Shown here: piece by piece, positions 36,034 to 64,000 of the stretch
How positions within the stretch are numbered: the stretch's first letter is position 1
Layout of the letters: each line of letters starts with the position of its first letter
Source: Phallusia mammillata
Taxonomy: Eukaryota
Direction of reading: 5' to 3'
Length of the DNA stretch: 64,000 bases
NCBI GenBank assembly: GCA_965637545.1
Contig: OZ281501.1
Coordinates: 19,530,001-19,594,000, forward strand
Notes under the pieces: generated by a model
What the model was told of the DNA's origin: nothing
The model's input: the letters and a program-made list of their open reading frames with translations, nothing else
Databases searched by the model: none
Translations under genes and position numbers: made by a program

Positions 36034-38394
36034 TTAAGCGGTTTGCTGAAGAAGGTAGCCGAGCATAGCGGTGACAAGGATCACCAACACATTCTGCACT
36101 GGAGAAGTTGATCCGCTGCCTGTAACAGAGCGAGAAACAATTGAAGTTCATCAATGAAGTTTTTCCCTAGTGATGCAATATGCACAGAAATCCCGACCAA
36201 CGCGCATAACCGATATTTTAAATCAATATTATTCGAATATTATTCTTTAATATTGTGGGTTGAACAGTTTTTATCTACAATTTTTGGTTTGCGTAACAGA
36301 ACTTAAATATAGCGCACCTTGGTTGCATCCATGTCCTGTGCAGGTTCTGTTGCACATTCTGTAATCGATTCCATCAACAGTAGTCTCGTTGCAGCCGTTG
36401 CCTTGATCGAAGAAAGCGCATCCTCTGACGACTTCTGAAGTAAATCGTTCCTTTGAACTTTCCGGACCTAAACATTTTCACAACATGTACATTTTGGCCC
36501 CCAACCATTGTGATGCTCCTAAAATTTTAGTTTGCTTACCGATTTCCCTGACGAAGCAGTATTGGTGAGCAGGATTGGAGCAGACAGTTGCCACTGGTGG
36601 GTTTTTAAGGCAAATGTCGTATCCAGCCACAAGTCCGTCAAAGCTAGATGAAGATCTTTGAGTACTGCATTGCACACATCTGCTTCGGGTTGCTGTAAAA
36701 AAAATTGTGAACAAACTTTATTTTCCAATCTAGAAAGTTTTAAGGACGGAAGTAAAACTTACGAAATCCTACGTTGCATCCGTCTTCAGTGCAGCTTTCC
36801 TCGCAAGTCACTCTCAATGCGCTGCTTGTTCCAAGTGTTGCGTTCGTGCAAGAATTCACAGATGTTGTGGAATCACGGCATCCGCGTTCAATTGATTCAA
36901 TCCAAACATCGGGATTAGCTGAACAACAATCCACAATAAAGCACAAAGAAAGTTTGATTCAAACACGAACCACGTACCTTGGTGTCGAAGATCGCCTTTT
37001 TCCTGGTAGTAGTAGATAATTTTTGAGTAGCACTGATTCGCTGCACCTTGGCAAAGTGTTCTTCCGGTTGCGGTGGTGCATGAGTGAGAATTTCCGGTTC
37101 CTGTACATTGTACGCACTGGAGAGCTCTATCTGCGGCCGCTACAACTCCATCAGCTGCAAACATTCACTTGTCAACCTCGCTGTTTTCCATATTATTGCT
37201 TGTGCTTACGTGTTCCTGTGTTGCAGTCATCGGTCTGACAAGTACTGGTGCAGGTCTGTTCAGTGTGGTCGGTGAATCTGGTGTCAGAAGGGTTAGAAAA
37301 CTCGCATCGGTCTTGGAAGTTGTTGGTTGTTGTGCATCCGCGGGTTATTCGGCTCGCCACCACGGCCCCAACTAAAACATACGTGAATATATGAAAACAT
37401 AAAAGTTTTTTTTTCATCTGGACTGATCAAAACTTTTGTTCACTTACCGGTATCATACAGGGTAGTTCTAGTTGTTGTGCAGTAAACATTTGCAGCCGGC
37501 TGATTAATAGAGCAAGCTGTTCCTGCTGTTTTTGTGGCACAAGTGCTGTCAGTTTCCTGGGAGCATTGGACGCAAGAACGACGGGTAATTGTCACTGTGT
37601 GTAGAAAGTTGGATAAATTTGTAATGGTCGCAAATCTGATGTTAATATTTACCTGCAGTTGTACAATTAGTTCCCATGAAATCTCCCACACAAACACACT
37701 GACCAGTGAAGTAATTGCAATATCCGTTGTTCATGCATGTTGATGCGCATGACATCAAGCTGTCTATAAGTTAATAGTATCTATATTATCTTGTAATGTT
37801 TAGCGAGGTGGTATCAACTTACTCGGTGCGATCGTGTTGCAGTTATTAGTTGTACAAATATGGTAGCAAGTTGTCTCTGCAACATTGCTGTTGGCGCCGA
37901 ATACTGTGTTACACTTTGGCGATGCTGGGACGGTGTTTATTGTCGTGTCAAAGTCGGCAGGAGTTTCAGCATCTTGTCTGCTTCTCATCATCAGGCTCAG
38001 AACGCCTAAACAGATTTATCAAGACATGCAACTTCAAGTCCAGTAACGTAATTCACTTATTCTCACCGTCGCTGAACACACTTCTGGTTAAGCAATATGG
38101 AGTCATAGATGAAGTTACAGTTGGTGGGGTTAAGTTAGTTGCGTTGTCGTAGCAATGGTTGTTGGTCTGAGTCTGGTCAAAGAAGCCCGTTGTCGTGCAC
38201 TCTATACATGACCTGTTTGTTTGGCCTAAAAAATGTCGTTGTTAGAAATTGTTAGATGATCTTCCACCGCATATTAATATTTTTCAAGAACCTCAGACAT
38301 TTACATTATTTAACTTTTATTAACCTTAAAACTTACCATTCACAGAAACGAAGCAGGCAACCGCCATCATCACACAAACTGTCGACAACTTCAT
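36034..38394 (-). CDS. Array copy B: 4xLU + EGF GPI-type surface protein
   Basis: ATG at 38394 (MKLSTVCVMMAVACFVSVNG), the same 11-exon phase-1 layout, and a last exon 36119-36034 reading GSGSTSPVQNVLVILVTAMLGYLLQQTA*. Confidence 0.85.
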
Positions 38395-39325
38395 TTTTAT
38401 CACTTATTTAACGTTTTTAAATTAAACAAAAAGTTTCCTACAACCTGAAAAACAGAACAACAACAACACTTAGCGGTTGAAAGTCGGATTCTTTCAAAAC
38501 GAAACTAAATTGGATTCTTAGTTTTTTTGCCTATTAATCTGAAGCTGCAAAAACAAATTTAACTTTGAAAAGTTTTGACCGCGTTCCGTCGAACCTGAAA
38601 GTAAAAAGATATCAGTATTAAAAAAACTAGTTTTATCTTTGACAAAATTGTTAATGCTTGATTTTTTTCTCTATGGCGTTTGTGTTTAATATGGTGATAT
38701 AAAAAGAATCCTCCAAAACGCCCAAAACAATCTAATTTTTCTGTCACAAAGATGTGAGTTAAAAACAAGTTCCCGCCGTATGTCGTTTTAAGTTTCTGTT
38801 TTTTTGCCACGGCAAAGCATTGCAGAAGTTATGAAGTTTTAATAAACTCTGGTTTTGATTGATGTCGCTATACATCGACAAATTGAAATTCGTTTACAAT
38901 TTTCTTCAGTTAAATGGCGTGTTGGATGAAGTTTGTTCGCCAAATTTGCCGCTGTAACGTTTAGTGTGAGGATATTTGGTGGAGAATTGAAAGCTACTCT
39001 TAAAGGTTTTCCACACAGAAAAGTTTTTGGTTCAAGTTTTCGTTGCAAGTAATTGTCTGGCTTTATGTGCAAGTTCGATTTTGGTTTAAATTATTTTTAG
39101 TCAATTTTAGTCAATTCGCTTGGGCACTTTCAGTTGAACGGTTAATTATTAACATTATTACTGTGGGTCATTTTAAACAGGGTCTGACCTATTCGAACGA
39201 GGCTCTGTTTTAAAATATTCGGTTTTTGTGCGAATTTGAAAACGCTGCCGGGAAACAGAGCATCCTTAGCAGCATCTTGTCCAGACCATACTACTTTGTG
39301 TTGCTTGATACGGGATGCTTTAAAA

Positions 39326-39565: not shown

Positions 39566-40659
39566 GTTTAAAACATCGGTTTGGCTAAAATTTTGGAGGT
39601 GCCATATAAAGTTTTTGTGAGGTTTGGAGCTTTTTAAACTTGTTTCCACTCAACGATCGGAATGACCGTTAGTTTGTGTGAGGTCAGGTTTCATAAATAT
39701 TACGGTGCGGCGAGATTTTAATTTTGGTTGGGTTGCGCTAAAATTTGTGCAGAAAAATGGCCGACGTTTAACTCGCCGGCGTGAGTTACACGCGTGAGTG
39801 ATTATGCCACGGTTGGCATGGGAACGGGCGGTTGTCGGGAGAGTTTTGTCATGCGGAACGTTGCGTTGAAACATTTCCAACCCACGCGCGAAGTTGGCAG
39901 GTTGTACGGTTAATTTCGGGATATTTAGGGGCGTAACTTACCGATCAAACTTTGTAAATCCAGTGGTGGGTATTTAAGTGGTTGAATATTATGTCAACGT
40001 GAGTCGGGCCCTGCACCTTTGAATACTTACAGCACACTGTGCATACTACGCATGTTTCATTGCACCGCAACCTATTTGTTTCGATGCAGACTAAACTAAA
40101 GGCGGTTTTCATGGTTTGTAATCGAGAGTTTTCGATAAACCCCCGTTTGTTTGTTAAGCCCATATTTAGTAAGCTTTGGGGGATTTTATGTTGATTTTAA
40201 CTTCCCCATACATTGAGATTGCGGGTGCAAAGGTGCGGGAAATTACAGTGTGCTATATCTGCAAGGGTCAACAAACTAAAGCTGAAGCGGAAAAAAATCA
40301 CAAAGCAGCTTTTTGAATCAGCGTGAAGCAAGCAAGCATAAATCGTTGTGTGAATAAGCTGCATGCACGACTGCACGTCACATTGCGGAAAGCAGGTTTT
40401 GCGATTAATAGAAAGCATTTGTATTTTGCGGCACACAGAAAACATTCAATTATCTTGCCAACTGAAAAAGTCAACAATCATGCAATGAACGTCCAACTGT
40501 GCGCTAAATATTCACCAAATTGAAGCAAGCATTAGCGAATAAGCGGAAGCATTGACTACAAGCATTTCCCTTGCTGGGATAAAATAATAATTATTTCTAC
40601 ATCATGCAAATCACTCAGTTAAAACGTCACCCAGCAAACAAACAAATTCTCTTTCCATT

Positions 40660-43176
40660 TTACAACGAGAAGAATCGTTGCAAAGAATATCCGACGAGTG
40701 GAGGGAGAGACATCATCAGCAAATTCTGCAATGGCATCACAGACCCGTTGCCTGTCAACAAAACTTTTTTAAATACTCGATCAAGTGGGTTTCGCTTTTT
40801 ATTTAAAGCGGCAAATCATATTAAGTGCGACTTCATTTGTCGAAAACGCTTGGGAACGTAGAATTCTGGGTATTTATATTCTGAGGCAGTTGTTTGTTGC
40901 ATTTTATATTAGGACGCCTTTTTGTCCAGTTTTAATTGGAAGTGGATTCCTAAACTTTATTAAACTTTTCACAAATCAACTTTGGTGCAAAAAGACGCAG
41001 GAAAATGTGACTGGTTTACACTTGCATGTTTTATCGTAACACGCACCTTGGTTGCAACCATGTCCTGTGCAGGTTCTGTTGCACACCCGGTAATCGACCC
41101 CGTCAACAGTAGTCTCGTTGCAGCCGTTGCCCTGATCGAAGAAAGCGCAGTCTCTGACGACATCTCGGCTGAAACCTTCTCTGTCTTCACCTGAACCGAA
41201 AAAGTTTGGGTCAGAAACGGCACTTACTGTTTTAACCAACAAGTTTGCTTACCGGTTTCCCTTACGAAGCAATATTGTTCAGCAGGGCTTTCGCAGACAG
41301 TTGCCACTGGTGGGTTGTTCAGGCAAATGTCGTATCCAGCCACAAGTCCGTCAAAGCTGGACGAAGATCTTTGAGTCCTGCATTGCACACAGCTGCTTCG
41401 GTTTGCTGGGGGAAAGTTAAGGTAAACATCTAAACTGGGATCAGTCCTAAAGCGCCGATGCAGACCAGTACAATAAAATATTTTTAAACTAGAACGACCG
41501 AAGTGAAACTTACGAAATCCGACGTTGCATCCGTCTTCAGTGCAGCTTTCCTCGCATGTCACTCTCAATGCGCTGCTTGTTCCAAGTGTTGCGTTAGTGC
41601 AAGAGTTTACAGATGTTGTGGAATCACGGCATCCGCGTTCAATTGATTCAACCAATACATCGGGATCAGCTGAACAACAATCCACAATAAACACAAAGGA
41701 AGTTTGATTCAAACACGAACCACGTACCTTGGTGGCGAAGATCGCCTTTTTCCTGATAGTAGTAGATAATTTTTGAGTAGCACTGATTCGCGGCACCTTG
41801 GCAAAGTGTTCTTCCGGTTGCGGTGGTGCATGAGTGAGAATTTCCGGTTCCTGTGCATTGTACGCAATAGAGAGCTCTATCTGCGGCCGCTACAACTCCA
41901 TCAGCTGCAAACATTCACTTGTCAACCTCGCTGTTTTCCATATTATTGCCTGTGCTTACGTGTTCCTGTGTTGCAGTTATCGGTCTGACAAGTACTGGTG
42001 CAGGTCTGTTCAGTGTGGTCGGTGAATCTGGTGTCAGAAGGGTTGGAAAACTCGCATCGGTCTTGGAAGTTGTTGGTTGTTGTGCATCCGCGGGTTATTC
42101 GGCTCGTCACCACAGCCCCAACTACAAGAAAGCGAATAAAATGGTTGAAAATCGTGCTTACCAGGAACAGAATATACTTTAATTTGCCTTTCACAGCTTC
42201 TCATTTTTGAAATAACTTACCGGCATCGTACAGGGTAGTTCTAGTTGTTGTGCAGTAAACATCTGCAGCCGGCGAGTCAATAGAGCAAGCTGTTCCTGCT
42301 GTTTTTGTGGCACAAGTGCTGTCAGTTTCCTGGGAGCATTGAACGCAAGAACGACGGGTAACTGTCACTGTGTGTAGAAAGTTGGATAATTTTGTGATGA
42401 TCGCAAATCTGATGTTGATATTTACCTGCAGTTCCACAACCAGTTCCACTGAAACCTGAATTGCAAACGCACTGACCAGTGAAGTAATTGCAATATCCTT
42501 GGTTTGTCGTGCATGTTGATGCGCATGACATCAAGCTGTCTGTAAGTTGCAACAGGTGATTTATCTTGTGATGATAAGTAATAATGTTGTAAGGTATCAA
42601 CTTACTTGCTGTGATCGTGTTACAATTGTCAGTTGTACAAGTATGGTAGCAAGTTGTCAGTTCAATTCCGTTGCCGAATACTGTATTACACTTTGGCGAT
42701 GTTGGGACGGTGGTTATTGTGGAGTCAAAGTCACTTGATGCATCTTGAACGCTTCTTTCCACAGATCTTAGGTTTCCTTAACAACAATATTCTGTCAATA
42801 CCTGCACTTAATCAACCAAATGTAGCCACTTAATCTTACCGTCGGCGATTGTGAACGTGGTGAGGCAATATGGTGTTGTGACTGTTGTCAATGACGCTGT
42901 TGGTAAGTTGGTCGTGTTGTCATAGCAATGGTTGTTGGTCTGAACTTCGTCATAAAACTGAATAGTAAGTGAGCATATTCTGCACATTCTTGTGGTCGTT
43001 GTTTGGCCTAGAGAGAAAGGAAATTTTACATTATGAGAACACCTTGCCCCGCTTGTAAATATTTCTCAAGAAACTTAGGCATTTACATTATTTAACTTTT
43101 GTTAAACTTAAAACTTACCATCGACCGAAACGAAGCAGGCAACCGCCAACATCACACAAACTATCGACAACTTCAT
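40660..43176 (-). CDS. Array copy C: 4xLU + EGF GPI-type surface protein
   Basis: ATG at 43176. LU1 begins RMCRICSLTIQFYDEVQTNNHC, the EGF reads SCASTCTTNQGYCNYFTGQCVCNSGFSGTGC, and the tail is GNGSVMPLQNLLMMSLPPLVGYSLQRFFSL*. Confidence 0.83.
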
Positions 43177-45773: not shown

Positions 45774-48641
45774 TTACAACGAGAAGAATCGTTGCAAGGA
45801 ATATCCGATGAGTGCAGGGAGAGACATCATCAGCAAACTCTGCAATGGCATCGCAGACCCGTTGCCTGCAAACAAAACTTTGTTTAAATACTCGACCAAG
45901 TGTGTTTCGTTTACTTCATTTGTCGAAAACGCTTTTGAACGTAGAATTCTGGGTATTTATCTTCTGAGGCAGTCGTTTGTTGCATTTTATATCAGGACGC
46001 TTTTTGGTCCAGTTCTTATTCAAAGTGAATTCTTAAAGTTTATTAAACTTTTCACAAATCGACTTTGGTGCAAAAAGTCACAGAAAAAGTAACTGGGTTA
46101 CACCGGTATGTTTTATGGTAACACGCACCTTGGTTGCAACCATTCCCTGTGCAGGTTCTGTTGCACACTCGGTAATCGACCCCGTCAACAGTAGTCTCGT
46201 TGCAGCTGTTTCCTTGGTCGAAGAAAGCGCATCCTCTGGTGACGTCTCGGCTGAAACCTTCTCTGTCTTCACCTGAACCGCGAAAGTTTGGGTCAGAAAT
46301 GTCATTTTCCACTTTCATTGACAAGTTTGCTTACCGATTTCCCTGACGAAGCAATATCGATGAGCAGGGCTTGTGCAGACAGTTGCCACTGGTGGGTTGT
46401 TGAGGCAAATGTCGTATCCAGCCACAAGTCCGTCAAAGCTGGATGAAGACCTTTGAGTACTGCAGTCCACACATCTGCTGCGGTTTGCTATAAAAAGATT
46501 GTCAACAAACTTTATAATTTCCAAACTGGAAACAGCGCTGAAGCGTTTATGCAGAACAACGATCACGGCACACTTATTATATGTATAAACCATAATACGC
46601 CAGGCCCATTGAACGAGTCTTATCGAATCAGCCGGTCACCAAGCATTCCCGTATATGACAAGACATAAATTAGAGAAATCTAGCATGCAGTGGGATTCGA
46701 ACCCATGTCAGGGGCCATTTTCACGTCTTGCGCTTTATCAACTGTTCTAAACAGGCTACGTGTCGAGCCATAATTCAATCGGTCTGGCGTACAGTGAAGT
46801 ATTTCCAAACTAGAAAGGTTTAACGACCGAAGTGCAACTTACGAAATCCAACGTTGCATCCGTCTTCAGTGCAGCTTTCCTCGCATGTCACTCTCAATGC
46901 GCTGCTTGTTCCAAGTGTTGCGTTAGTGCAAGAGTTCACAGATGTTGTGGAATCACGGCATCCTCGTTCAATTGATTCAATCATAACATCAGGATTAGCT
47001 GAATAGCAATCCACGTTAAAGCACAAAGAAAACAGTAAAACCAACGGACGATAAAATTCTTGCTAGAACAGAATACTAAGGTTTTTATCGTCCTTTGGTT
47101 TTACTCTAATAAAAAAAAGCAAACAGTGATCGTCAGTTTAAGTCGTGCTGTGATGGTTTTCATCGATTACTAAAGTTGTCATTTTGAAAGCACAACAATT
47201 CAAACACGAACCACGTACCTTGGTAGCGAAGATCGCCTTTTTCCTGGTAGTAGTAGATAATTCTTGTGTAGCACTGATTCGCTGCACCTTGGCAAAGTGT
47301 TCTCGCGGTTTGAGTGATGCATGAAGAACCTCCGGTTCCTGTGCATTGTACGCACTGGAGAGCTCTATCTGCGGCCGCTACAACTCCATCAGCTGCAAAC
47401 ATTCACTTGTCAACTTCGCTGTTTTCCATATTATTGTTTGTGCTTACGTGTTCCTGTGTTGCAGTTATCGGTCTGACAAGTGCTAGTGCAAGTCTGTTCA
47501 GTGTGATCGGTGAATCTGTTGTCAGAAGGGTTGGAAAACTCGCATCTGTCTTGGAAGTTGTTGGTTGTTGTGCACCCGCGGGTTATTCGGCTCGTTACCA
47601 CGGCCCCAACTACAACAGACGTGAATAAAAATATTAAAGTTTTTTTCCGTCTGAGCTTGTCACAACATTTGCTTTTGTGCATTTTTAAAATAACCTACCG
47701 GCATCATACAGGGTAGTTCTAGTTGTTGTGCAGTAAACATTTGCAGCCGGCATATTAATAGAGCAAGCTGTTCCTGTTGTTTTTGTGGCACAAGTGCTGT
47801 CAGTTTCCTGGGAGCATTGGACGCAAGAACGACGGGTAACTGTCACTGTGTGTAGAAAGTTGGATAAATTTGTGATGGTTGCAAATCTGATGTTGATATT
47901 TACCTGCAGTTCCACAATCAGTTCCACTCCAATCTCCCGCACAAACGCACTGACCAGTGAAGTAGTTGCAATATCCGTTGTTCATGCATGTTGATGCGCA
48001 TGACATCAAGCTGTCTGTAAGTTGCAGCAATAAGTGATTTATCTTGTAATGATAAGTAATAACGTTGTCATATGTCAACTCACTTGCTGCGATCGTGTTG
48101 CAGTTGTTAGTTGTGCAAATATGGTAGCAAGTTGTCATTTCAATTCCATTGTTGAATGCTACTTCGCATTTTGGCGATGCTGGGACGGTTGTTATTGTGG
48201 AGTCAAAGTCACTTGCAGCATCTTGTCTGGTTCTCGTCATCATGCTCAGAACACCTAAACAGATTTGTCAAAACATGAAACTTCAAGTTTACTAACTCAA
48301 TTCACTTAATCTCACCGTCGCGGAAAACGCTCGTGGTTAAGCAATATGGAGTCATAGATGAAGTAGCAGCTGGTGGGATTAAGTTAGTTGCGTTGTCGTA
48401 ACAATAGTTGTCCGTCTGAGTCTGGTCAGCATACAAGCCCGTTGTCGCGCACACTATGCATGATCTGTTTGTTTGGCCTGAAAGAAATGTCGTATTGTTA
48501 GACGATCTTGCGTCGTGTAACTAACATTTCTCAAGAAACTCAGACATTTGCATTATTTATCTTTTATTAAACTTAAAACTTACCATTGACAGAAACGAAG
48601 CAGGCAACCGCCAACATCACACAAACTATCGACAACTTCAT
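45774..48641 (-). CDS. Array copy D: 4xLU + EGF GPI-type surface protein
   Basis: ATG at 48641. LU1 begins RSCIVCATTGLYADQTQTDNYC, and the tail is GNGSAMPLQSLLMMSLPALIGYSLQRFFSL*. Introns in the LU3/LU4 region are enlarged by insertions. Confidence 0.83.
46540..46790 (-). mobile_element. tRNA-derived SINE-like insertion in the LU3b-LU4a intron of copy D
   Basis: The minus strand reads catGGGTTCGAATCCcactgcatgc, a B-box at about 46693-46703. A homologous insert sits at the same intron in F and G and is absent from B, C and E. Confidence 0.45.
47034..47106. repeat. Small palindromic insertion unique to copy D (LU3a-LU3b intron)
   Basis: agtaaaaccaacggacgataaaa ... ttttatcgtcctttggttttact inverted arms. 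Confidence 0.6.
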
Positions 48642-51165: not shown

Positions 51166-53635
51166 TTACAACGAGAAGAATCGTTGCAAGGAATATCCGA
51201 TGAGTGCAGGGAGAGACATCATCAGCAAACTCTGCAATGGCATCACAGACCCGTTGCCTGCAAACAAAACTTTGTTTAAATACTTGGCCAAGTGGGTTTC
51301 GTTTTTGTTGAAGCATTAAACTTTTGTAAAGTGCGACTGTGGCGGTTGGACACGTCCCAGGTGCGAAGTAATCACGAGTAACATATTCAGGTGCAATCAA
51401 TAAAAGCAGAGTTTGATCGCTAATACTTGTGCGTACGGATCGAAAACCCAAATAGTTAAACTTTATTACAAACCTTATTTCTGAACAGTGGCGTTTTAAA
51501 TTCTTACTGCCTAGTTGAGACACCGGTTTGTTTTATCGTAACACGCACCTTGGTTACAACCATGTCCGGTGCAGGTTCTGTTGCACACTTTGTAATCGAC
51601 CCCGTCAACAGTAGTCTCGTCGCAGCTGTTGACCTGGTCGAAGAAAGAGCATCCTCTGACGACTTCTCTGCTGAAACCTTCTCTGTCTTCACCTAGACCA
51701 AGAAAGTTTGGGTCAGAAACGTCACTTTTAACTTTCACTGACAAGTTTGCTTACCGGTTTCCCTGACGAAGCAATATCGATGAGCAGGGCTTGAGCAGTC
51801 AACTGCAATTGATGGGTTGTTCAGGCAAACGTCGTATCCAACCACAAGTCCGTTGATGTTGAGAGTAGTTCCCCCAGTGGATGCCGCGACGGATCTTTCA
51901 GTACTGCATTGCACACATCTGCTGCGGTTGGCTGCAAAAAGATTGTCAGCAAACATTAGTATTTCCGAATTAGAAACGTTTTAACGACCGAAGTGAAACT
52001 TACGAAATCCTACGTTGCATCCGTCTTCAGTGCAGCTTTCCTCGCATGTCACTCTCAATGCGCTGCTTGTTCCAAGTGTTGCGTTAGTGCAAGAGTTCAC
52101 AGATGTTGTGGAATCACGGCATCCGCGTTCAATTGATTCAATCATAACATCGGAATCAGCTGAATAGCAATCCACAATAAAGCACAAAAAAAGTTTGATT
52201 CAAACACGAACCACGTACCTTGGTAGCGAAGATCGCCTTTTTCCTGGTAGTAGTAGATGATTCTTGAGTAGCACTGATTCGCTGCACCTTGGCAAAGTGT
52301 TCTGTCGGTTCGAGTGTTGCATGAGGAACCTCCGGTTCCTGTGCATTGTACGCACTGGAGAGCTCTATCTGTGGCCGCTACAACTCCATCAGCTGCAAAC
52401 ATTCACTTGTCAATTTCGTTGTTTTCCATATTATTGCTTGTGCTTACGTGTTCCTGTGTTGCAGTTATCGGTCTGACAAGTACTGGTGCAAGTCTGTTCA
52501 GTGTGGTCGGTGAATCTGCCGTCAGAAGGGGCGGAAAACTTGCATCTGTCTTGGAAGTTGTTGGTTGTTGTGCATCCGCGGGTTATTCGGCTCGTCACCA
52601 CGGCCCCAACTACAAGAAAGCGAAAGAACTAGTTTAAAATCGTGTTTAACGGGAACAGAACATACTTGAATTTTGCTTTTCACAGCTTCTCATTTTTGAA
52701 ATGACTTACCGGCATCGTACAGGGTAGTTCTAGTTGTTGTGCAGTAAACATTTGCAGCCGACATATTAATAGAGCAAGGTGTTCCTGCTGTTTTTGTGGC
52801 ACAAGTGCTGTCAGTTTCCTGGGAGCATTGGACGCAAGAACGACGGGTAACTGTCACTGTGTGTAGAAAGTTGGATAAATTTGTGATGATTGCAAATCTG
52901 ATGTTGATGTTTACCTGCAGTTCCACAATCAGCTCCACTCCAATCTCCCACACAAACGCACTGACCAGTGAAGTAGTTGCAATATCCGTTGTTCATGCAT
53001 GTTGATGCGCATGACATCAAGCTGTCTGTAAGTTCCAGCAATAAGTGATTTATCTTGTGTTGTTTAGTGATAATGTTGTCAGGTATCAACTTACTTGCTG
53101 TGATCGTGTTACAATTGTCAGTTGTGCAAGTGTGGTAACAAGTTGTCAGTTCAACTCCTTGGCTAAATACTGTGTTGCATTTTGGCGATGTTGGGACGGT
53201 TGTTATTGTGGTGTCAAAGTCACTTGATGCATCTTGTCTGCTTCTGTCCACAGATCACAGGTTTGCTTAACAAAATTCTGTCAATACCTGCACTTATCAA
53301 CTAACTGTATCCTCCACTTAATTTACCATCGGCGATTGTGAACGTGGTGAGACAATGTGGAGTGACGGATGATTGCAACATAGATGCTTCATTTGTCGAG
53401 TTGTCATAGCAGTGGTTGTTGTTCTGGTCTTGGTCATAGTGCATGGAATTCGAACATACTCTGCACATTCTGTCCACATTTGTTTGGCCTGGAAATAAAT
53501 TAATAAACAACAATTGAACAAAACTCCTGTAACGTGGGCATTCGTATGATTCATCTTTTGTCAAACTTAAAACTTACCATTGACAGAAACGAAGCAGGCA
53601 ACCGCCAACATCACACAAACTATCGACAACTTCAT
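51166..53635 (-). pseudogene. Array copy E: full exon set but with an in-frame TGA in exon 3 (probable null allele or pseudogene)
   Basis: Exon 3 reads ttaag|CA AAC CTG TGA TCT GTG (TGA at 53257-53255), where copy C has ttaag|GA AAC CTA AGA TCT GTG. I found no nearby AG that restores frame past the stop. Confidence 0.65.
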
Positions 53636-56602
53636 TATTATCACTTATTTAATGTTTTTTAATTAAACACAAAGTTTCCTACAACCTGAAAAACAGAACA
53701 ACAACACTTAGTGGTGGAAGGCGGATTCTTTCAAACAAAACTAAATCAGGCTCTTAGTTTTTTTTGCTATTAATCTAAAACTGCAAAACAAGTATAATTT
53801 TGACAAGTTTTGACCGTTTTCCGTCGAATCTGAAAGTAAAAATATCGGTGTCAGTAAAAACTATTTTTTTTCGCTCTGGCAGAATTAGGAATAAAAAATG
53901 TTTTACTGATTTTTTTATTGCAAGATTTTTGTCTCATGCTGGTAATAAATTTTATTTCCCTGAACGTCCAAGGGTCGTCTAATTTTCCCTGTTACAAAAA
54001 AAATTTCCTTATGTTGCTTAACAATGTGTTTATTTTATTCGATAACTGGTGTTGTTAAAATTGGTGTACACACTTTTTTGGGTTTTTTATATGTTTTTAT
54101 GACTTCTTTTGTAATATCTGCTTCAGCCAAAACTGATGGATTTAAACAGGTGACGTAATTGGTTGATTGCAAGCAGCTGCAAATTTTGTTTTTACAAATT
54201 TTTAGTTTAGTATGAACGCTGAGTAAAAACGAGCACATGTTTTGAACAGATCCGTTTAAATGCGGTTGCTTGACTTTCTTCAGGTTTGTAACACCAATAT
54301 TGTGAGGTTTGAATGCTGCCGCTGTGTATGGACAAATTGATATACGTTTACTGTTGCCATCAGTTACATGGCGTTTTGAGTTTAGATTGCTTGCCAGATT
54401 TGCATCTTTAACGTTAAGTTTTTGAATGTTTGGTGACCAAATAAAAGTTACCCTAGTGGTTTGCAAAACATGAGAGTTTTTTTCTGCGTGTTTTCTTCGC
54501 GAGTAATGTTCTGGTTTTATACGCAAACTCTCTGAAGCAAAATTTTGTTTGGGCACTTTCAGTTGAACGGTTAATTGTTAATATTATTGCTGTGGATTTC
54601 TTACTCGGGTGATTCGTTTTAAAGATCCGGGTTTTATGCGAATTTGAAAACGTTCTCGGGAAACAGAGCATCGTTAGCAGCGTCATGTCCAGACTAAACT
54701 ATGTTGTGGTGCTTAATACGGGTTGGTTTAAATATCACTTCAGCTACCCTAGCAGGTGAAACAAGGAATTTTGTGAGGTTTAAAGCTTTTTGAACTTGTT
54801 TCTACTCTATGATCTGAATGACTATTAGTTTGTGTGAGGTCATGTCTAGTATTACGGTGCGGCGAGATTTTAGTTTTGGTTTGGTTGCGCTAAAAATTAA
54901 GCGGAGCAAAAAAGGGTGTGAAGTTTCACGGATGAGTGATTACGTCACGGTTGGCATGGTAACGACTGGTAGCATTAGGGTTTTGTCATGCGGAACGTGA
55001 CGTTAAAACATTTCCAACCCGTGCACAAAGTTGCAAAGTTACACTAAAGATTTTTGCTGCAATTTATTTTTAAACTTTGAATTGACCGCTCGATACAAAT
55101 TTTGAAAAATGTGGAAATTTATTTAGCAACAGGATATTCGGTCAATATGTTTGCTCCGGCGAACGCTGTATTTTTCCCGTACAAATGTTATTGCATGTGA
55201 TTAAAACCGCTTAAAAATTTTTAGTCAACCAGTATTACTCGCATAAATGTTGACACACGCAGCCATGTTTAATTTGAAATGGCACGTAAGTTGTCAAACA
55301 GCTTTTAAAAACTTGCCGAGCCTTGATATGCAGTTTGTAACTGAAACAATAGACAATCAAAGTTGCCAAAAATGAAAACTCTCATACGATTTAATTCGAC
55401 GCATTTCGCAACTCTAGGAAATTTATCTGCGAAATATATTGAAAAGGTATAGATGCGTAAAAAGTGTTGTCGTTAGAAAACGGTGTGAAACTTGTTACAT
55501 CAGGTTTGAAGGTATACGTCGTAAATTAAAGTATGAAAACATAAAAATTATGGTAAAATGACCAAACAGTTGATGACACAAAGCGCGTCTTCCAGGAGCT
55601 TTATCTGAAAATGCTGTCAATACGAACCCAACCGATTTGAAAGTTGTAACAGAAAATCAGGTTATAAATGAAATAACTATATGTAATTCTGCTTACGAAT
55701 TAGTTTTCTGGATTATTTCATTAACATTAGATAACAAAGTTAATTTGCCGAAAAGTTACTGGACTAAACAACAAGGTATTTCGTGTTTCAGTTTTGTGGT
55801 TATCAAGGAACATGGTTGTTTTACAAAGCATGGGAACATTTTTTTTACTTTATTAAACGACGATGCATTTTGCCTTTACGTGCTGTGATAGTTTTAACCC
55901 ATTTAACCCATGCCTAAAGGGTGGCGCATGCTTTTCTCGTTGTCGTGGAAACAAGCGGCAAGTTTTCATGCAAGATGTGATTCAGGGTTTAAACCACAAA
56001 ATTGTTTGTCTAGTGTTTCTCAAAATGAGCGCAAACGCATTCATGGGGCTGTTCGCAATAATGGTCGGGCGCTGGAATAAATCTGGGCAGTTGGAACCCT
56101 AAGCAGGGACAAATGAAATTCGTTCACATATCCATTTAAACATCCAACATGAGCAACTTGGGTAAATGTATTTGTAAAATCGATTCCTACGGAAATTCGA
56201 TCTTGGTCAACCGGTGTCAGTGTATAAACCGTGGTTAAGTTTTTTTAAAGAAACTGTTTTGCAAATGGCAAGCAGTTTAGGGTAGTGATAAGGAAAACTG
56301 TTTAAAAACACTGGTTTGGTCAATAATAATTAAATGCGTGCAGTTAACGCTACAACATGCAAAATGTACAACATTGTACGCTTGTGCAATAAATATGGAA
56401 AATTTGTATTTGATGACATGCAGGTCACATTCAGAATTGAGCCAACTGTAAAAGTCAGCAATCATGCAAAGAATAGAAACTGCTTCGATAAATTTACAGT
56501 GAAGGTTTATAACCGGAGTTTAACACTACAAAATATAATCTACATCATGCAAATCACACAGTTAAAACGTCACCCAGCAAACAAACAAATTCTCTGTCCA
56601 TT

Positions 56603-59262
56603 TTACAACGAGAAGAATCGTTGCAAGGAATATCCGATGAGTGCAGGGAGAGACATCATCAGCAAACTCTGCAATGGCATCGCAGACCCGTTGCCTGCAA
56701 ACAAAACTTTGTTTAAATACTCGGGTTTCGCTTTTTAGTTGAAGCCGCAAGTCAAGTTAAGTGCGACTTAATTTGTCGAAAACGCTTGAAAGCGTAAAAT
56801 TCTTGGTATTTATTTTCTGAGGCAGTTGTTTCTTGCATTTTATATCAGGACGCTTTTTTGTCTAGTTCTTATTGATAGTGGAATTTTAAACTTTATTAAA
56901 CTTTTCACGATACAATTCTGGTGCAAAAGGCGCAGGAACTGTGACTGGTTTACACTTGTATGTTTTATTTTAACACGTACCTTGGTTGCAACCATTTCCG
57001 GTGCAAGTTCTGTTGCACATTTTGTAATCGACCCCGTCAACAGTTGTCTCATTGCAGCCGTTGCCCTGATCGAAGTAAGCGCAGCCTCTGGTGACTTCTC
57101 GAGTGAAACCTTCTCTGTCCTCACCTGAACCGAGAAAGTTGGTGTTTAGAACAGCCATTTTCAACTTTCACTGACAAGCTTGCTTACCGGTTTCTCTGAC
57201 GAAGCAATATTGTTCAGCAGGGCTATCGCAGCGTGCTGCCACTGTTGGGTTGTTGAGGCAAACGTCGTATCCAGCCACAAGTCCGTGGTAGTTGGTTAAT
57301 TCTCTTTGAGTACTGCATCGCACACATCTGCTACGGTTGGCTGGAAAAAGTTAAGATAAACATAAGATCTAAACTGGTATCAGTTTTAAAGCGTCGTTGC
57401 AGACCAGCAATCACGGCACACTTATAAATCACACGCCAGTCGCCAGGCCTATTGAACCAAACACTCAGCATTCCGTCATATGGCTAGGCGTAGGCTAGAA
57501 AAATCTGGCATGCGGTGGGATTTGAACCCATGTTCGCATCTTGCGCTCGATCAAGGCTCAGTGGCGAGCCTAAATACAAGGTCTGGACGTACAATTAAAT
57601 ATTTTTCGAACTGGAAACGTTTTGACGACGAAAGTGCAACTTACGAAATCCGACGTTGCATCCGTCATCAGTGCAGCTTTCCTCGCATGTCACTCTCAAT
57701 GCGCTGCTTGTTCCAAGTGTTACGTTAGTGCAAGAGTTCACAGATGTTGTGGAATCACGGCATCCGCGTTCAATTGATATAATCCAAACATCGGGATTAG
57801 CTGACCAACAATCCACAATAAAGCACAGAGAAAGTTTGATTCAACCACGAACCACGTACCTTGGTGGCGAAGATCGCTTTTTTCCTGGTAGTAGTAGATA
57901 GTTTTTGTGTAGCACTGATTCGCTGATTCGCGGCAAAGTTTTCTCGCGGTTGCATCAATGCATGTGTGGCCATTGCCTGTTCCTGTACATTGTACGCACT
58001 GGAGAGCTTTATCTGCGGCCGCTACAACTCCATCAGCTGCAAACATTCACTTGTCAACCTCGCTGTTTTCCATATTATTGCTTGTGCTTACGTGTTCCTA
58101 TGTTGCAGCCGTCGGTCTGACACGTGCTGGTGCAAGTCTGTTCAGTGTGGTCGGCGAATCTGGTGTCAGAAGGGGCGGAAAACTCGCATCTGTCTTGGAA
58201 GTTGTTGGTTGTTGTGCATCCGCGGGTTATTCGGCTCGTTACCACGGCCCCAGCTACAACATACGGGAATAAAAGTAATAAAGTTTTTTTGTCTGAGCTT
58301 GTCTCAACTTTTGCTTTTAATATTGCCTTACCGGCATCGTACAGGGTAGTTCTAGTTGTTGTGCAGTAAACATTTGCAGCCGGCGAGTTAATAGAGCAAG
58401 CTGTTCCTGTTGTTTTTGTGGGACAAGTGCTATCAGTTTCCTGGGAGCATTGGACGCAAGAACGACGGGTAACTGTCACTGTGTGTAGAAAGTTGGATAA
58501 ATTTGTGATGATTGCAAATATGCTGTTGATATTTACCTTCAGTGCAATTAGTTCCCATGAAATTTCCCACACAAACGCACTGACCAGTGAAGTAATTGCA
58601 ATAACCTCCGTTCATGCATGTTGATGCGCATGACAACAAGCTGTCTGCAAGTTGCAACAAGTGAATTATCTTGTGATGTTTAGTGATAATGTTGTCAGGT
58701 GTCAACTTACTTGCTGCGAGAGTGTTGCAGTTGTTAGTTGTACAAGTGTGGCGGCAGGTAGTTACTTCAACTCCGTTGCCGAATACTACTTCGCATTTCG
58801 GGGATGCTGGGACGGTGGTTATTGTCGTGTCAAAGTCACTTGCAGCATCTTCTCTGGTTCTCGTCATCATGCTCAAAACACCTAAACAGATTTATCAAAA
58901 CATGAAACTTCAAGTTCACTAACTCAATTCCTTTATTCTCACCGTCGCGGAAAATGCTCGTGGTTAAGCAATATGGAGTCATAGATGAAGTAGCAGGTGG
59001 TGGGGTTAAGTTAGTTGCGTTGTCGTAGCAATGGTTGTCGGTCTGGTCTTCGTCGTAAAAACCCGTTGTCGCGCACTCTATGCATGATCTGTCTGTTTGG
59101 CCTGAAAAAATTTCGTATTGTTAGACGACCTTGCGTCGTGTTTAACATTTCTCAGAAAACTCGGACATTTACATTATTTAACTTTTATTAAACTTAAAAC
59201 TTACCATTGACAGAAACGAAGCAGGCAACCGCCAACATCACACACACTATCGACAACTTCAT
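56603..59262 (-). CDS. Array copy F: 4xLU + EGF GPI-type surface protein
   Basis: ATG at 59262. LU1 begins RSCIECATTGFYDEDQTDNHC, LU3 has HTCIDATARKLCRESANQC, LU4 has RCVRCSTQRELTNYHGLVAGYDVC, and the tail exon is intact. Confidence 0.83.
57400..57600 (-). mobile_element. SINE-like insertion in copy F, homologous to those in D and G
   Basis: The minus strand reads catGGGTTCAAATCCcaccgcatgc, with shared flanks gtacg(t)ccagacc and ataagtgtgccgtgat. Confidence 0.4.
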
Positions 59263-62155: not shown

Positions 62156-64000
62156 TTACAACGAGAAGAATCGTTGCAAGGAATATCCGATGAGTGCAGG
62201 GAGAGACATCATCAGCAAACTCTGCAATGGCATCACAGACCCGTTGCCTGCCAACAAAACTTTGTTTAAATACTCGACCAAGTGTGTTTCGTTTCGTAGT
62301 TAAAGCCGCAAATCACATTAAGTGCGACTTCATTTGTCAAAAACGCTTTTGAACGTAGAATTCTGGGTATTTATATTCTGAGGCAGTTGTTTATTGCATT
62401 TTATATCAGGACACTTTTTTGTCCAGTTCTTATTCAAAGTGAATTCTTAAAGTTTATTAAACTTTTCACAAATCGACTTTGGTGCAAAAAGTCACAGAAA
62501 AAGTAACTGGGTTACACCGGTATGTTTTATGGTAACACGCACCTTGGTTGCAACCATTCCCTGTGCAGGTTCTGTTGCACACTCGGTAATCGACCCCGTC
62601 AACAGTAGTCTCGTTGCAGCTGTTTCCTTGGTCGAAGAAAGCGCATCCTCTGGTGACGTCTCGGCTGAAACCTTCTCTGTCTTCACCTGAACCGCGAAAG
62701 TTTGGGTCAGAAATGTCATTTTCCACTTTCATTGACAAGTTTGCTTACCGATTTCCCTGACAAAGCAATATCGATGAGCAGGGCTTGTGCAGACAGTTGC
62801 CACTGGTGGGTTATTTAGGCAAATGTCGTATCCAGCCACAAGTCCGTCAAAGCTGGATGAAGACCTTTGAGTACTGCAGTCCACACATCTGCTTCGGGTT
62901 GCTGTAAAAAGATTGTCAACGAACTTTATAATTTCCAAACTGGAAACAGCCCTGAAGTGTTTATGCAGAACAGCGATCACGGAATACTTATAAACCATAA
63001 TACGCCAGCCCCATTTAAGGAGACTTATCTAATCAGCCGGTCACCAAGCATTCCCATATATGAAAAGACATAGGCTAGAGAAATCTAGCATGCAGTGGGA
63101 TTCGAAGCAATTTCAGGGGCCATTTTCACGTCCTGCGCTCTATCAACTGTTCTACACAGGCTCAGTGTCGAGCCTTAATTCAATCGGTCTGACGTACAGA
63201 GAAATATTTCCAAACTAGACAGTTTTAACGACCAAATTGAAACTTACGAAATCCGACGTTGCATCCGTCTTCAGTGCAGCTTTCCTCGCATGTCACTCTC
63301 AATGCGCTGCTTGTTCCAAGTGTTGCGTTAGTGCAAGAGTTCACAGATGTTGTGGAATCACGGCATCCGCGTTCAGTTGATATAATCCAAACATCGGGAT
63401 TAGCTGAACAACAATCCACAATAAAGCACAGAGAAAGTTTGATTCAACCACGAACCACGTACCTTGGTGGCGAAGATCGCCCTTTTCCTGATAGTAGTAG
63501 ATAATTTTTGAGTAGCACTGATTCGCGGCACCTTGGCAAAGTGTTCTTCCGGTTATGGTGTTGCACGAGTGACCATTTCCGGTTCCTGTGCATTGTACGC
63601 ACTGGAGAGCTCTATCTGCGGCCGCTACAACTCCATCAGCTGCAAACATTCACTTGTCAACCTCGCTGTTTTCCATATTATTGCTTGTGCTTACGTGTTC
63701 CTGTGTTGCAGTTATCGGTCTGACAAGTGCTGGTGCAAGTCTGTTCAGTGTGGTCGGTGAATCTGGTGTCAGAAGGGTTGGAAAACTCGCATCGGTCTTG
63801 GAAGTTGTTGGTTGTTGTGCATCCGCGGGTTATTCGGCTCGTCACCACGGCCCCAACTACAAGAAATCGAAAGAACTAGTTTGAAATCGTGTTTACCGGG
63901 AACAGAACATTATTTAATTTCTTCTTCACTCTCAGTTTTGAAATAACTTACCGGCATCGTACAGGGTAGTTCTAGTTGTTGTGCAGTAAACATCTGCAGC
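62156..64000 (-). CDS. Array copy G (5' part outside the window): end of LU2 through LU3, LU4 and GPI-type tail
   Basis: The same exons as B-F from LU2a onward. The LU4 exons translate identically to copy D, and the stop is at 62158-62156. Confidence 0.8.
62970..63200 (-). mobile_element. SINE-like insertion in copy G, near-identical to that in D
   Basis: gcttcgaatcccactgcatgctagatttctc, with surrounding sequence closely matching 46600-46790. Confidence 0.45.

What the first reader, a model, noticed from the sequence alone, without database searches (positions are those of the whole stretch)
36034..64000. Domain-selective diversification: variable LU1 and loop I of LU3/LU4, near-invariant LU2 and LU3b
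Seen in sequence: LU2b (SRITRGCTTTNNFQDRCEFS.PSD.RF.DHTEQTCTSTCQTD.CN) and LU3b (ERGCRDSTTSVNSCTN.TLGTSSALRVTCEESCT.DGCN) barely differ among B-G. By contrast, LU1 loop I reads TTTGFFDQTQ / SLTIQFYDEVQ / ATTGLYADQTQ / SNSMHYDQDQ / ATTGFYDEDQ. LU3 loop I reads NSHSCTTATG / GSSCITQTA / GSSCNTRTD / NGHTCIDATA / NGHSCNTITG. LU4 loop I reads RSSSSFD / RSVAASTGGTTLNIN / RELTNYH and includes indels. Inference: finger-tip variation on a conserved scaffold is what a diversifying binding surface would look like. Uneven gene conversion could give a similar pattern.
Basis: partly seen in the sequence, partly recalled or inferred. Interest (0 to 1): 0.7.

Follow-up and report, generated by a model that had tools for sequence, protein, structure and literature searches.

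The report
Gene-conversion mosaic in Ly6/uPAR array
A tandem array of seven sea-squirt-type surface-protein genes really does have variable and near-invariant domains, but the pattern mostly reflects uneven copying between neighbouring gene copies, not selection for diverse binding loops.

Summary
The minus strand carries close paralogs B-G, plus H beyond the window end and a diverged copy A upstream. Each gene has 11 exons: signal peptide, LU1, EGF, LU2, LU3, LU4 and a GPI-signal exon. Each LU domain takes two exons, and all introns are phase 1 with GT/AG ends. LU1 and the first loops of LU3 and LU4 vary; LU2b and LU3b barely do (chi2 = 57, p = 2e-9).

Neutral divergence follows the same map. 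Synonymous divergence (dS) is 0.87 in LU1a against 0.07-0.13 in LU2a, LU2b and LU3b. Introns I4, I6 and I7 differ by 5-9%, against about 30% elsewhere. Every exon has dN/dS (omega) below 1.

Segment trees conflict (AU p down to 1e-38). In the central block, neighbouring genes of different LU1 type cluster together. The array is a repeated alpha-beta gene pair whose EGF-LU3b block has been homogenised.

The M2a and M8 positive-selection signals disappear once site rates may vary, except in EGF+LU2a.

Relatives are few and, where named, ascidian. An earlier scan note (s1-399174) had already described the G/H pair.

The parts
31936..34624 (-). Gene A: diverged paralog (about 40-57% aa identity per exon) with the same architecture SP-LU1-EGF-LU2-LU3-LU4-GPI signal
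   Evidence: tblastn of gene C exon peptides; all exon ORFs read
37823..38394 (-). Gene B 5' block (SP, LU1a, LU1b), alpha-type LU1
   Evidence: gene model with AG/GT at all introns; S1 tree
36763..37763 (-). Gene B central homogenised block (EGF, LU2a, LU2b, LU3a, LU3b)
   Evidence: 3.5% from neighbour C in LU2b-LU3b
36034..36692 (-). Gene B 3' block (LU4a, LU4b and its own diverged GPI-signal exon at 36034-36119)
43119..43176 (-). Gene C exon 1: signal peptide
42840..43007 (-). Gene C exon 2: LU1a (beta type)
42606..42776 (-). Gene C exon 3: LU1b
42426..42539 (-). Gene C exon 4: EGF module (6 Cys)
   Evidence: Pfam EGF_2 E = 0.004, below its cut-off
42221..42367 (-). Gene C exon 5: LU2a
42122..42220 (-). 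Gene C intron I5: keeps deep two-class divergence (p 0.38-0.48 between classes) between two homogenised exons
41960..42121 (-). Gene C exon 6: LU2b (near-invariant)
41905..41959 (-). Gene C intron I6: 55 nt in all seven copies, 5% divergence
41728..41904 (-). Gene C exon 7: LU3a
   Evidence: Pfam UPAR_LY6 E = 5e-4, below its cut-off
41514..41669 (-). Gene C exon 8: LU3b (near-invariant)
41253..41405 (-). Gene C exon 9: LU4a
41047..41190 (-). Gene C exon 10: LU4b
40660..40751 (-). Gene C exon 11: C-terminal GPI-signal-like tail (GNGSVMPLQNLLMMSLPPLVGYSLQRFFSL)
   Evidence: inferred from sequence features only
48084..48641 (-). Gene D 5' block (alpha LU1)
46843..48014 (-). Gene D central block (a 161-nt insertion in I7)
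45774..46487 (-). Gene D 3' block; 1.4% from gene G and identical to it in I9
53095..53635 (-). Gene E 5' block (beta LU1); in-frame TGA at 53255-53257 in the 4th codon of LU1b
52004..53025 (-). Gene E central block; an RNA-type contig joins 52856 to 52915, which is the predicted intron I4
51166..51931 (-). Gene E 3' block, with an 8-codon insertion in LU4 loop I
58711..59262 (-). Gene F 5' block (alpha LU1)
57645..58644 (-). Gene F central block
56603..57340 (-). Gene F 3' block
63248..64000 (-). Gene G central block, cut by the window end (LU3b, LU3a, LU2b, part of LU2a); the rest of G (alpha LU1) and gene H lie beyond 64000
62156..62901 (-). Gene G 3' block
42928..42972 (-). LU1 loop I, gene C (B 38155-38196, D 48404-48448, E 53412-53453, F 59031-59072): omega 0.42, synonymous rate 1.9x the block
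41804..41854 (-). LU3 loop I, gene C (B 37054-37104, D 47295-47342, E 52295-52342, F 57936-57986, G 63539-63589): divergence island with synonymous rate 2.6x the rest (p = 0.001) and omega 0.69
41326..41379 (-). LU4 loop I, gene C (B 36613-36666, D 46408-46461, E 51828-51905, F 57261-57314, G 62822-62875): indels; omega 0.86 vs 0.30 in the rest
42439..42462 (-). EGF C5-C6 loop, gene C (B 37666-37689, D 47917-47940, E 52928-52951, F 58547-58570): by my hand count about 17 nonsynonymous and no synonymous changes; the only patch with omega above 1 (found post hoc)

Best explanation
The region holds a tandem array of seven closely related genes (B-H), plus a diverged copy A, for putatively GPI-anchored surface proteins. 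Each is built as signal peptide, LU1, EGF, LU2, LU3, LU4 and a GPI signal. The array grew by duplicating a two-gene unit: an alpha gene (B, D, G, plus an extra F) followed by a beta gene (C, E, H). The two types differ deeply in LU1.

After these duplications, gene conversion and/or unequal crossing-over repeatedly copied sequence between copies, mostly between neighbours. This happened most effectively in the central EGF-LU3b block and less so in the LU4-GPI block. It hardly happened in the SP-LU1 block, or in intron I5, whose length differs between copies.

So 'variable LU1, invariant LU2b/LU3b' is mainly a map of how long ago each segment was last homogenised. Protein-level constraint per unit of neutral change is similar across domains (omega about 0.3-0.6). 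Loops are moderately less constrained than the scaffold but not demonstrably under positive selection.

Shown: the gene models, the divergence map, discordant histories, omega at or below 1 in the named loops, and one spliced transcript junction. Inferred: conversion as the mechanism, GPI anchoring, and surface-receptor function.
For: Gene models: 11 exons and 10 phase-1 GT/AG introns in all seven copies, six with open frames. An RNA-type contig splices exactly at predicted intron I4.

Neutral divergence tracks the pattern:
- dS is LU1a 0.87, LU1b 0.43, EGF 0.13, LU2a 0.07, LU2b 0.13, LU3a 0.18, LU3b 0.09, LU4a 0.26, LU4b 0.32.
- Intron JC distances are I1 0.32, I2 0.35, I3 0.18, I4 0.09, I6 0.054, I7 0.093, I8-I10 about 0.3.
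- Among amino-acid-invariant codons, 58-62% carry synonymous differences in LU1, against 15-22% in EGF-LU3b.
- Exon pS and pN correlate (Spearman 0.87, p = 0.002).

Discordant histories:
- In AU tests the 5' block rejects the other topologies at p < 1e-38, and the LU4 block at p < 5e-4. The central blocks reject the 5' and LU4 trees at p = 0.0002-0.015.
- In the central block, alpha and beta genes of one unit are each other's closest relatives: B-C 3.5%, D-E 2.5-5.6%. In LU1 the same pairs differ by 28%.
- Spacer types define the alpha-beta unit.
- Shared tracts are longer than permutations allow. D-G agree at 157 consecutive variable sites, E-H at 73, and B-C at 29 consecutive variable sites within LU3a; B and C are also identical across LU3 loop I. 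All p < 0.0005.

Selection tests:
- M0 omega is 0.57 (LU1), 1.09 (EGF+LU2a), 0.48 (LU2b-LU3b), 0.37 (LU4).
- With a patch-specific synonymous rate, the loops give omega 0.42, 0.69 and 0.86.
- M1a vs M2a is significant without rate variation. With gamma site rates it vanishes for LU1 (p = 1), LU2b-LU3b (p = 0.17) and LU4 (p = 0.94).
Against: Intron I5 stays deeply diverged (JC 0.36) between two homogenised exons. This needs short tracts or a heterology barrier, which is assumed, not shown.

LU3 loop I is a narrow island with both synonymous and nonsynonymous excess inside the homogenised block. Neutral conversion does not predict that.

EGF+LU2a keeps a class of sites with omega above 1 even with rate variation (2dL = 13.9, p = 0.0009).

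The codon models are my own implementation, run on only seven paralogs with fixed block trees. Recombination inside blocks is not excluded. Conversion cannot be separated from unequal crossing-over with these data.
Confidence: 0.8

Rival explanations
1. Diversifying positive selection on finger-tip loops (LU1, LU3 loop I, LU4 loop I) of a binding surface is the main cause of the domain-selective variation.
For: Variation and in-frame indels are concentrated in loop I of LU3 and LU4 and across LU1. Standard site models without rate variation favour a class with omega above 1: P3 2dL = 20.7, P1 7.1, joint 53. LU4 loop I has a higher omega than its scaffold (p = 0.027).
Against: omega is at or below 1 in every named loop. 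LU1 loop I is significantly below 1 (p = 0.02). Synonymous and intron divergence follow the same map. The M2a signal disappears for these blocks when site rates may vary. B and C share an identical LU3 loop I.
Confidence: 0.08
2. Divergence islands are kept by selection against homogenisation. Conversion acts everywhere, but tracts that would erase functional differences are removed by selection, so linked synonymous differences survive there too. The candidate islands are the alpha/beta LU1 types, LU3 loop I and the EGF C5-C6 loop. This adds to the best explanation rather than replacing it.
For: LU3 loop I is a roughly 50-bp island with a 2.6-fold synonymous rate excess (p = 0.001) inside a block with 5-9% intron divergence. 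The alpha/beta LU1 types persist in strict register with the two-gene unit while the downstream exons are homogenised. The EGF C5-C6 loop has nonsynonymous changes only.
Against: Sequence heterology alone can block conversion in LU1 and I5, which have indels and 28-40% divergence. B and C share LU3 loop I. The islands were delimited after looking at the data. There are no population or functional data.
Confidence: 0.2
3. There is no conversion. LU2b, LU3b and the central block are simply under stronger purifying selection, including at the nucleotide level, and all copies are equally old along their whole length.
For: LU2b and LU3b have low omega (0.37). Introns I4 and I6 have the same length in every copy, and I7 does so except for an insertion in D. 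That could hint at constraint.
Against: Constraint does not change tree topology, yet the central block groups adjacent alpha and beta genes and rejects the LU1 topology. Low divergence extends to three introns and to synonymous sites. The central-block distances (2.5-11%) are mostly below the divergence between the duplicated units' spacers (12-17%).
Confidence: 0.04

Closest known systems
Multi-LU GPI-anchored receptors of vertebrates (uPAR with 3 LU domains, C4.4A/LYPD3 with 2, CD177 with 4)
   Same: Several consecutive Ly6/uPAR three-finger domains. The 10-Cys pattern ends C-x3-C-x4-C-N. Each LU domain has two exons with phase-1 introns. There is a C-terminal hydrophobic GPI-type signal. 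Foldseek's top matches to the modelled LU3 include LYPD6/6B, uPAR, GPIHBP1 and C4.4A.
   Different: An EGF module sits between LU1 and LU2. No vertebrate protein was found by sequence: 12 relatives in 1.84 billion representatives, and 5 of the 6 clusters looked up are ascidian. Pfam LU models stay below their cut-off on the window's exons. This is the same domain class, not orthology.
Uncharacterised ascidian proteins (Ciona intestinalis XP_002129979, misnamed 'G surface protein', XP_002128273 'EGF-like domain-containing protein comC', LOC108949271; Ciona savignyi H2YKK1; Phallusia mammillata CAB3262712)
   Same: Same length (499-527 aa) and same order SP-LU1-EGF-LU2-LU3-LU4-hydrophobic tail. 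They are 33-54% identical over the matched stretches. Ciona also has a same-strand tandem pair of 523 and 527 aa. The LU3 of one Ciona member passes the Pfam QVR threshold.
   Different: The window's array is larger (8 genes) and its members are much closer to each other. None of the Ciona or Phallusia proteins has a described function.
Concerted evolution with divergence islands in tandem duplicates (gene-conversion models of Innan and Teshima; RHD/RHCE; from my own knowledge)
   Same: The mosaic consists of homogenised tracts and old segments. Synonymous and intron divergence vary together. Segment trees conflict. Adjacent copies are the most alike.
   Different: Here the mosaic coincides with domain boundaries of a modular, exon-shuffled protein. 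Whether any island is kept by selection is untested.
Hypervariable three-finger repertoires (snake three-finger toxins; plethodontid modulating factor; from my own knowledge)
   Same: A three-finger scaffold with conserved cysteines, variable loops and a multigene family.
   Different: Those families show dN/dS above 1 in the loops. Here the loops have omega 0.4-0.9 with matching synonymous divergence.

Membership tests
Ly6/uPAR (LU, three-finger) domain superfamily | 8-10 cysteines in the canonical spacing, ending C-x3-C-x4-C-N | tested here: met
   46 invariant Cys columns: LU1 has 8, EGF has 6, and LU2, LU3 and LU4 have 10 each. All four LU domains end CxxxCxxxxCN in all seven genes.
Ly6/uPAR (LU, three-finger) domain superfamily | Profile-HMM match above the curated threshold | tested here: inconclusive
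   On the window's exons only UPAR_LY6 matches, at 20.9 bits against a cut-off of 24.8 (LU3a). Exons had to be searched separately. The Ciona homolog P0007 passes QVR (32.9 bits against 27.3) over its LU3.
Ly6/uPAR (LU, three-finger) domain superfamily | Three-finger beta fold | tested here: inconclusive
   The AF2 model is of a Ciona homolog's LU3, with the window's LU3 exons in the alignment (pLDDT 64, pTM 0.57). Almost all of the top 30 Foldseek PDB matches are LU or three-finger domains, including TGF-beta-family receptor ectodomains (LYPD6B, LYPD6, uPAR, GPIHBP1, C4.4A), but at E = 0.025-0.5 and TM 0.26-0.56. ESM-Atlas feature hits all fall in the same clan, at scores 0.78-0.84.
Ly6/uPAR (LU, three-finger) domain superfamily | Two exons per LU domain, flanked by phase-1 introns | tested here: met
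   All 10 introns are phase 1 with AG/GT in seven genes. One junction (I4) is confirmed by a spliced contig.
GPI-anchored proteins | C-terminal signal: small omega-site residues, a spacer and a hydrophobic tail that is removed on anchoring | not testable with these tools
   The last exon encodes G-N-G-S...LLMMSLPALIGYSLQRFFSL in C-H and GSGSTSPVQNVLVILVTAMLGYLLQQTA in B. No GPI predictor or experiment was available.
Positively selected (diversifying) loop repertoires | dN/dS above 1 in the variable loops, not explained by local synonymous rate or recombination | tested here: not met
   Loop omega is 0.42 (LU1), 0.69 (LU3) and 0.86 (LU4). M2a with gamma rates is not significant for those blocks. 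Only the EGF C5-C6 loop, found post hoc, exceeds 1.
Concerted evolution by gene conversion or unequal crossing-over in a tandem array | Segment phylogenies significantly discordant | tested here: met
   AU tests.
Concerted evolution by gene conversion or unequal crossing-over in a tandem array | Neutral sites (synonymous sites, introns) homogenised together with the coding sequence | tested here: met
   The exception is intron I5.
Concerted evolution by gene conversion or unequal crossing-over in a tandem array | Pairwise shared tracts longer than chance | tested here: met
   A GENECONV-like permutation test gives 15 of 21 pairs p <= 0.0005. The GPI-region runs are inflated by B's unrelated exon, but D-G, E-H and B-C lie outside that region.

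The most novel reading that the evidence does not exclude
The old segments are not just places that conversion failed to reach. On this reading the alpha/beta LU1 dimorphism, the LU3 loop-I island (threefold synonymous excess inside a homogenised block) and the EGF C5-C6 loop (nonsynonymous changes only) are specificity determinants protected from homogenisation by selection. The array would then encode a small repertoire of paired alpha/beta surface receptors with distinct ligands in an ascidian-type genome, for example in cell-cell or gamete recognition.
Probability: 0.2. Interest if true: 0.6.

Novelty: new member of a known kind. Interest (0 to 1): 0.3.

Why it matters
This is a clean worked example of how a 'variable loops on a conserved scaffold' pattern among tandem paralogs can come from uneven gene conversion rather than adaptive diversification. 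It also shows that standard site models (M2a, M8) give false positives in that case unless synonymous or site-rate variation and segment-specific trees are allowed. The work yields complete gene models for an uncharacterised family of four-LU plus EGF surface proteins that appears restricted to ascidians, organised as alpha-beta gene pairs. It also points to three small segments (LU1 type, LU3 loop I, EGF C5-C6 loop) as the places to test first for functional differences between paralogs.

Tried and rejected
- Pfam on exon ORFs gave only sub-threshold UPAR_LY6 and EGF_2 matches.
- A profile search of PDB sequences with the ascidian homolog alignment gave nothing significant (LYPD6 at E = 0.6).
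- Literature searches found no paper on an LU+EGF family in ascidians. The 2026 invertebrate LU survey does not mention tunicates or EGF.
- Reads: only Logan contigs were available. One RNA-type contig confirmed one splice junction, but it cannot be assigned to a single paralog: it carries non-E states at 52779 and 52976 and a private one at 52804.
- The DNA run X3 gave a cluster of 'variants' at 52761-52779. These are the C/G-type paralog sequence laid on gene E, so no allelic polymorphism could be measured.
- The M1a/M2a and M7/M8 significance in LU2b-LU3b, LU1 and LU4 was rejected as evidence of positive selection after adding gamma site rates and patch-specific synonymous rates.
- The NEB sites in EGF+LU2a are mostly codons with multi-nucleotide differences and a homoplasic distribution on the block tree (for example CAG/TCG/ATG at column 206). 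This pattern is suspect for micro-mosaicism or multi-nucleotide mutation.
- Templated micro-conversion from outside the array was considered as a source of loop variants. No other close copy exists in the genome; other LU paralogs are at most 50% identical.
- The joint M8 fit timed out.
- Joined (spliced) protein models were never sent to any database search, fold or family tool. Those tools received single exons or uninterrupted ORFs by reference. Full-length searches with the window's own proteins were therefore left out. The joined models were used only inside local scripts: codon alignment, codon models and a local tblastn against locus L031.

Full report
**What is there.** The window is G000:C8:19530001-19594000 of a 240-Mb animal genome. 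From 36 kb onward the minus strand carries repeats of about 5.3 kb. Peptide searches and alignments resolve these into paralogous genes B-G. G is cut by the window end and a further copy H follows; both were recovered from loci L005 and L003. A diverged copy A lies at about 31.9-34.6 kb.

Each gene has 11 exons:
- a signal peptide (MKLSIVCVMLAVACFVSVNG);
- LU1a and LU1b;
- an EGF module;
- LU2a/b, LU3a/b and LU4a/b;
- a short last exon encoding small residues followed by a hydrophobic tail, which looks like a GPI signal.

All ten introns are phase 1 with AG/GT in all seven close copies. Six of those copies have open frames of 509-520 codons. Gene E has an in-frame TGA at the 4th codon of LU1b. 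An in-frame acceptor 27 nt downstream could rescue it. A contig from a run guessed to be RNA joins 52856 to 52915, exactly the predicted EGF-LU2a intron of gene E. At least one array member is therefore transcribed and spliced as modelled, although the contig cannot be assigned to one paralog.

**Domain identity.**
- LU2, LU3 and LU4 each have 10 invariant cysteines, LU1 has 8 and EGF has 6. Every LU domain ends C-x3-C-x4-C-N.
- Pfam sees the window's exons only below threshold: UPAR_LY6 at E = 5e-4 and EGF_2 at E = 0.004.
- A search of 1.84 billion representative proteins with the LU2 domain found only 12 relatives. I looked up six of their clusters. Five are ascidian (Ciona intestinalis, C. 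savignyi, Phallusia mammillata) and one is a planctomycete metagenome protein.
- The five full-length or near-full-length relatives I read (329-524 aa) have the same domain order; two shorter ones are N-terminal fragments that fit it.
- One Ciona member passes the Pfam QVR (Ly6-like) cut-off over its LU3.
- I modelled a Ciona LU3 with the window's LU3 exons in the alignment (pLDDT 64). Almost all of its top 30 PDB matches are LU or three-finger domains (LYPD6B, LYPD6, uPAR, GPIHBP1, C4.4A), at weak E-values. ESM-Atlas feature hits agree.
- Ciona also has a same-strand tandem pair of family members.
- The genome is therefore probably a tunicate's. The family is an uncharacterised four-LU plus EGF surface protein that appears restricted to ascidians.

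**The observation.** The fraction of variable amino-acid columns is 0.67 in LU1a, 0.57 in LU1b, 0.39 in EGF, 0.20 in LU2a, 0.22 in LU2b, 0.36 in LU3a, 0.15 in LU3b, 0.53 in LU4a and 0.42 in LU4b. The heterogeneity chi2 is 57.1, p = 1.7e-9. The pattern is real.

**Why the pattern exists.** Neutral divergence follows the same map.
- Nei-Gojobori dS, pooled over the 21 pairs, is LU1a 0.87, LU1b 0.43, EGF 0.13, LU2a 0.07, LU2b 0.13, LU3a 0.18, LU3b 0.09, LU4a 0.26 and LU4b 0.32.
- dN/dS for the same exons is 0.32, 0.51, 0.93, 0.61, 0.37, 0.55, 0.37, 0.57 and 0.26. The 'hypervariable' LU1a thus has the same omega as the 'invariant' LU2b and LU3b.
- Intron distances (JC) agree: I1 0.32, I2 0.35, I3 0.18, I4 0.09, I6 0.054, I7 0.093 and I8-I10 about 0.3.
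- At codons whose amino acid never changes, 58-62% carry synonymous differences in LU1, against 15-22% in EGF-LU3b.
- Exon pS and pN correlate (Spearman 0.87, p = 0.002).

**Different segments have different histories.**
- ML trees for SP-LU1b, EGF-LU2a, LU2b-LU3b and LU4a-LU4b conflict. In AU tests the 5' block rejects the other topologies at p < 1e-38 and the LU4 block at p < 5e-4. The two central blocks reject the 5' and LU4 trees at p = 0.0002-0.015 but accept each other's tree.
- In LU1 the genes fall into two old types that differ by about 28%: alpha (B, D, F, G) and beta (C, E, H).
- The intergenic spacers show why. B|C, D|E and G|H are one spacer type (83-88% identical over 2.1-2.4 kb). 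E|F and F|G are another. The array is therefore a repeated alpha-beta gene pair with one extra alpha, F.
- In the central block the alpha and beta genes of one unit are each other's nearest relatives: B-C 3.5%, and D-E 2.5% and 5.6%. Only sequence exchange after the unit duplicated can produce this.
- A GENECONV-like permutation test finds shared tracts far longer than chance. D-G agree at 157 consecutive variable sites (LU4a to I10), E-H at 73, and B-C at 29 within LU3a. All have p < 0.0005. B and C are also identical across LU3 loop I.
- Intron I5 is the exception. It keeps alpha/beta-level divergence (p 0.38-0.48 between classes) and varies in length from 76 to 100 nt. Its classes are swapped in the G-H unit. 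I read this as a heterology barrier that splits the central block into two conversion domains. That step is inference.

**Selection tests.** I wrote a Goldman-Yang-type codon likelihood (F3x4) and ran it with segment-specific trees.
- M0 omega is 0.57 (LU1), 1.09 (EGF+LU2a), 0.48 (LU2b-LU3b) and 0.37 (LU4). All except EGF+LU2a are significantly below 1.
- Plain M1a/M2a, M7/M8 and M8a/M8 tests favour a small class with omega above 1. The M1a/M2a statistics are EGF+LU2a 2dL = 28.4, LU2b-LU3b 20.7, LU1 7.1, LU4 5.9 and joint 53.
- These models assume one synonymous rate and one tree per block. With gamma-distributed site rates the signal vanishes for LU2b-LU3b (p = 0.17), LU4 (p = 0.94) and LU1 (p = 1). 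It remains only for EGF+LU2a (2dL = 13.9, p = 0.0009).
- Patch tests with a free local synonymous rate give these results:
  - LU1 loop I: synonymous rate 1.9x, omega 0.42 (significantly below 1).
  - LU3 loop I: synonymous rate 2.6x the rest of its block (p = 0.001), omega 0.69, which is different neither from 1 nor from the scaffold's 0.42.
  - LU4 loop I: omega 0.86 against 0.30 for the scaffold (p = 0.027), not above 1.
- Within-type comparisons (alpha genes only, beta genes only) also keep every loop below 1.

**What remains.** Three small features are not explained by neutral conversion alone.
- The strict persistence of the alpha/beta LU1 types.
- The narrow LU3 loop-I island, where both synonymous and nonsynonymous divergence are raised inside a homogenised block.
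- The EGF C5-C6 loop. By my hand count from the codon alignment it has about 17 nonsynonymous and no synonymous changes. omega exceeds 1 at p = 0.0035, and exceeds the rest of the block at p = 0.0016.

The EGF loop was found post hoc among about 45 segments. The high-posterior sites in that block are mostly multi-nucleotide, homoplasic codons, a known source of false positives. Genes A and C share the NSGF.G form of the loop, which is therefore probably ancestral. Selection against homogenisation at these islands is possible; I put it at about 0.2.

**Limits.**
- There are seven paralogs from one genome.
- The codon models are my own implementation, with branch lengths fixed from M0.
- Loop alignments contain indels.
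- The stop codon in gene E was treated as missing data.
- Population data could not be extracted. The DNA contigs laid on gene E mixed paralogs.
- GPI anchoring and surface location are inferred from sequence.
- Spliced protein models were used only in local scripts. Database, family and fold tools received single exons or uninterrupted ORFs by reference, so full-length searches with the window's own proteins were left out.

**Verdict.** Its main cause is a mosaic of concerted evolution in a tandem array of alpha-beta gene pairs, not adaptive diversification of finger tips. The phenomenon is of a known kind. The protein family is uncharacterised and appears to be lineage-restricted.

Noticed in passing
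window 53255-53257 (minus strand): Gene E has an in-frame TGA at the 4th codon of exon LU1b. An in-frame AG acceptor 27 nt downstream could bypass it. E may be a pseudogene or may use a shorter LU1b.
   Followed up: partly
window 46500-46800, 57400-57600, 62950-63200 (intron I8 of D, F, G); 47060-47220 (intron I7 of D): tRNA-like SINE fragments (with a ...GGTTCGAATCCCAC... T-arm motif) are inserted in introns of some copies only. A roughly 55-nt piece, also present in C's I8, matches dozens of sites on many chromosomes.
   Followed up: partly
L003:3370-3440 (window-equivalent about 69740-69810, upstream of H's LU1a): A relic of a C-type LU1a exon start (GCCAAACAACGACCACAA...) sits in H's enlarged intron 1 (240 nt). 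It looks like a leftover of an exon replacement or partial duplication.
   Followed up: no
window 42122-42220 and equivalents (intron I5): I5 falls into two deep classes, B/D/F/H and C/E/G, that do not follow the alpha/beta types. G carries the beta-type intron and H the alpha-type one (H vs D p = 0.048), as if swapped within the G-H unit.
   Followed up: partly
G000:C8 about 4.01-4.09 Mb, 6.02 Mb, 8.27 Mb; C4 8.05 Mb: More distant LU-domain exons (32-52% identity to LU2) cluster elsewhere on the same chromosome. They are probably other members of the family.
   Followed up: no
window 56127-56513: A 387-nt contig from a run guessed to be RNA lies in the spacer just below gene F's GPI exon. It could be F's 3' UTR or a transcript of the plus-strand ORF at 56334-56738.
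   Followed up: no
window 45430-46092, 40604-40861, 51110-51319, 56334-56738 (plus strand): Conserved plus-strand ORFs (up to 220 aa, MQITQLKRHPANKQ...) overlap the GPI-exon region of each unit on the opposite strand. They are probably a by-product of DNA-level conservation between recent duplicates.
   Followed up: no
window 36034-36119: Gene B has a GPI-signal exon unrelated at the DNA level to that of C-H. It resembles gene A's tail (…PVQNVLVILVTAMLGYLLQQ vs …PLQNLMIVSVLAIIGFFMQQ). B's 3' end may be the older form.
   Followed up: partly
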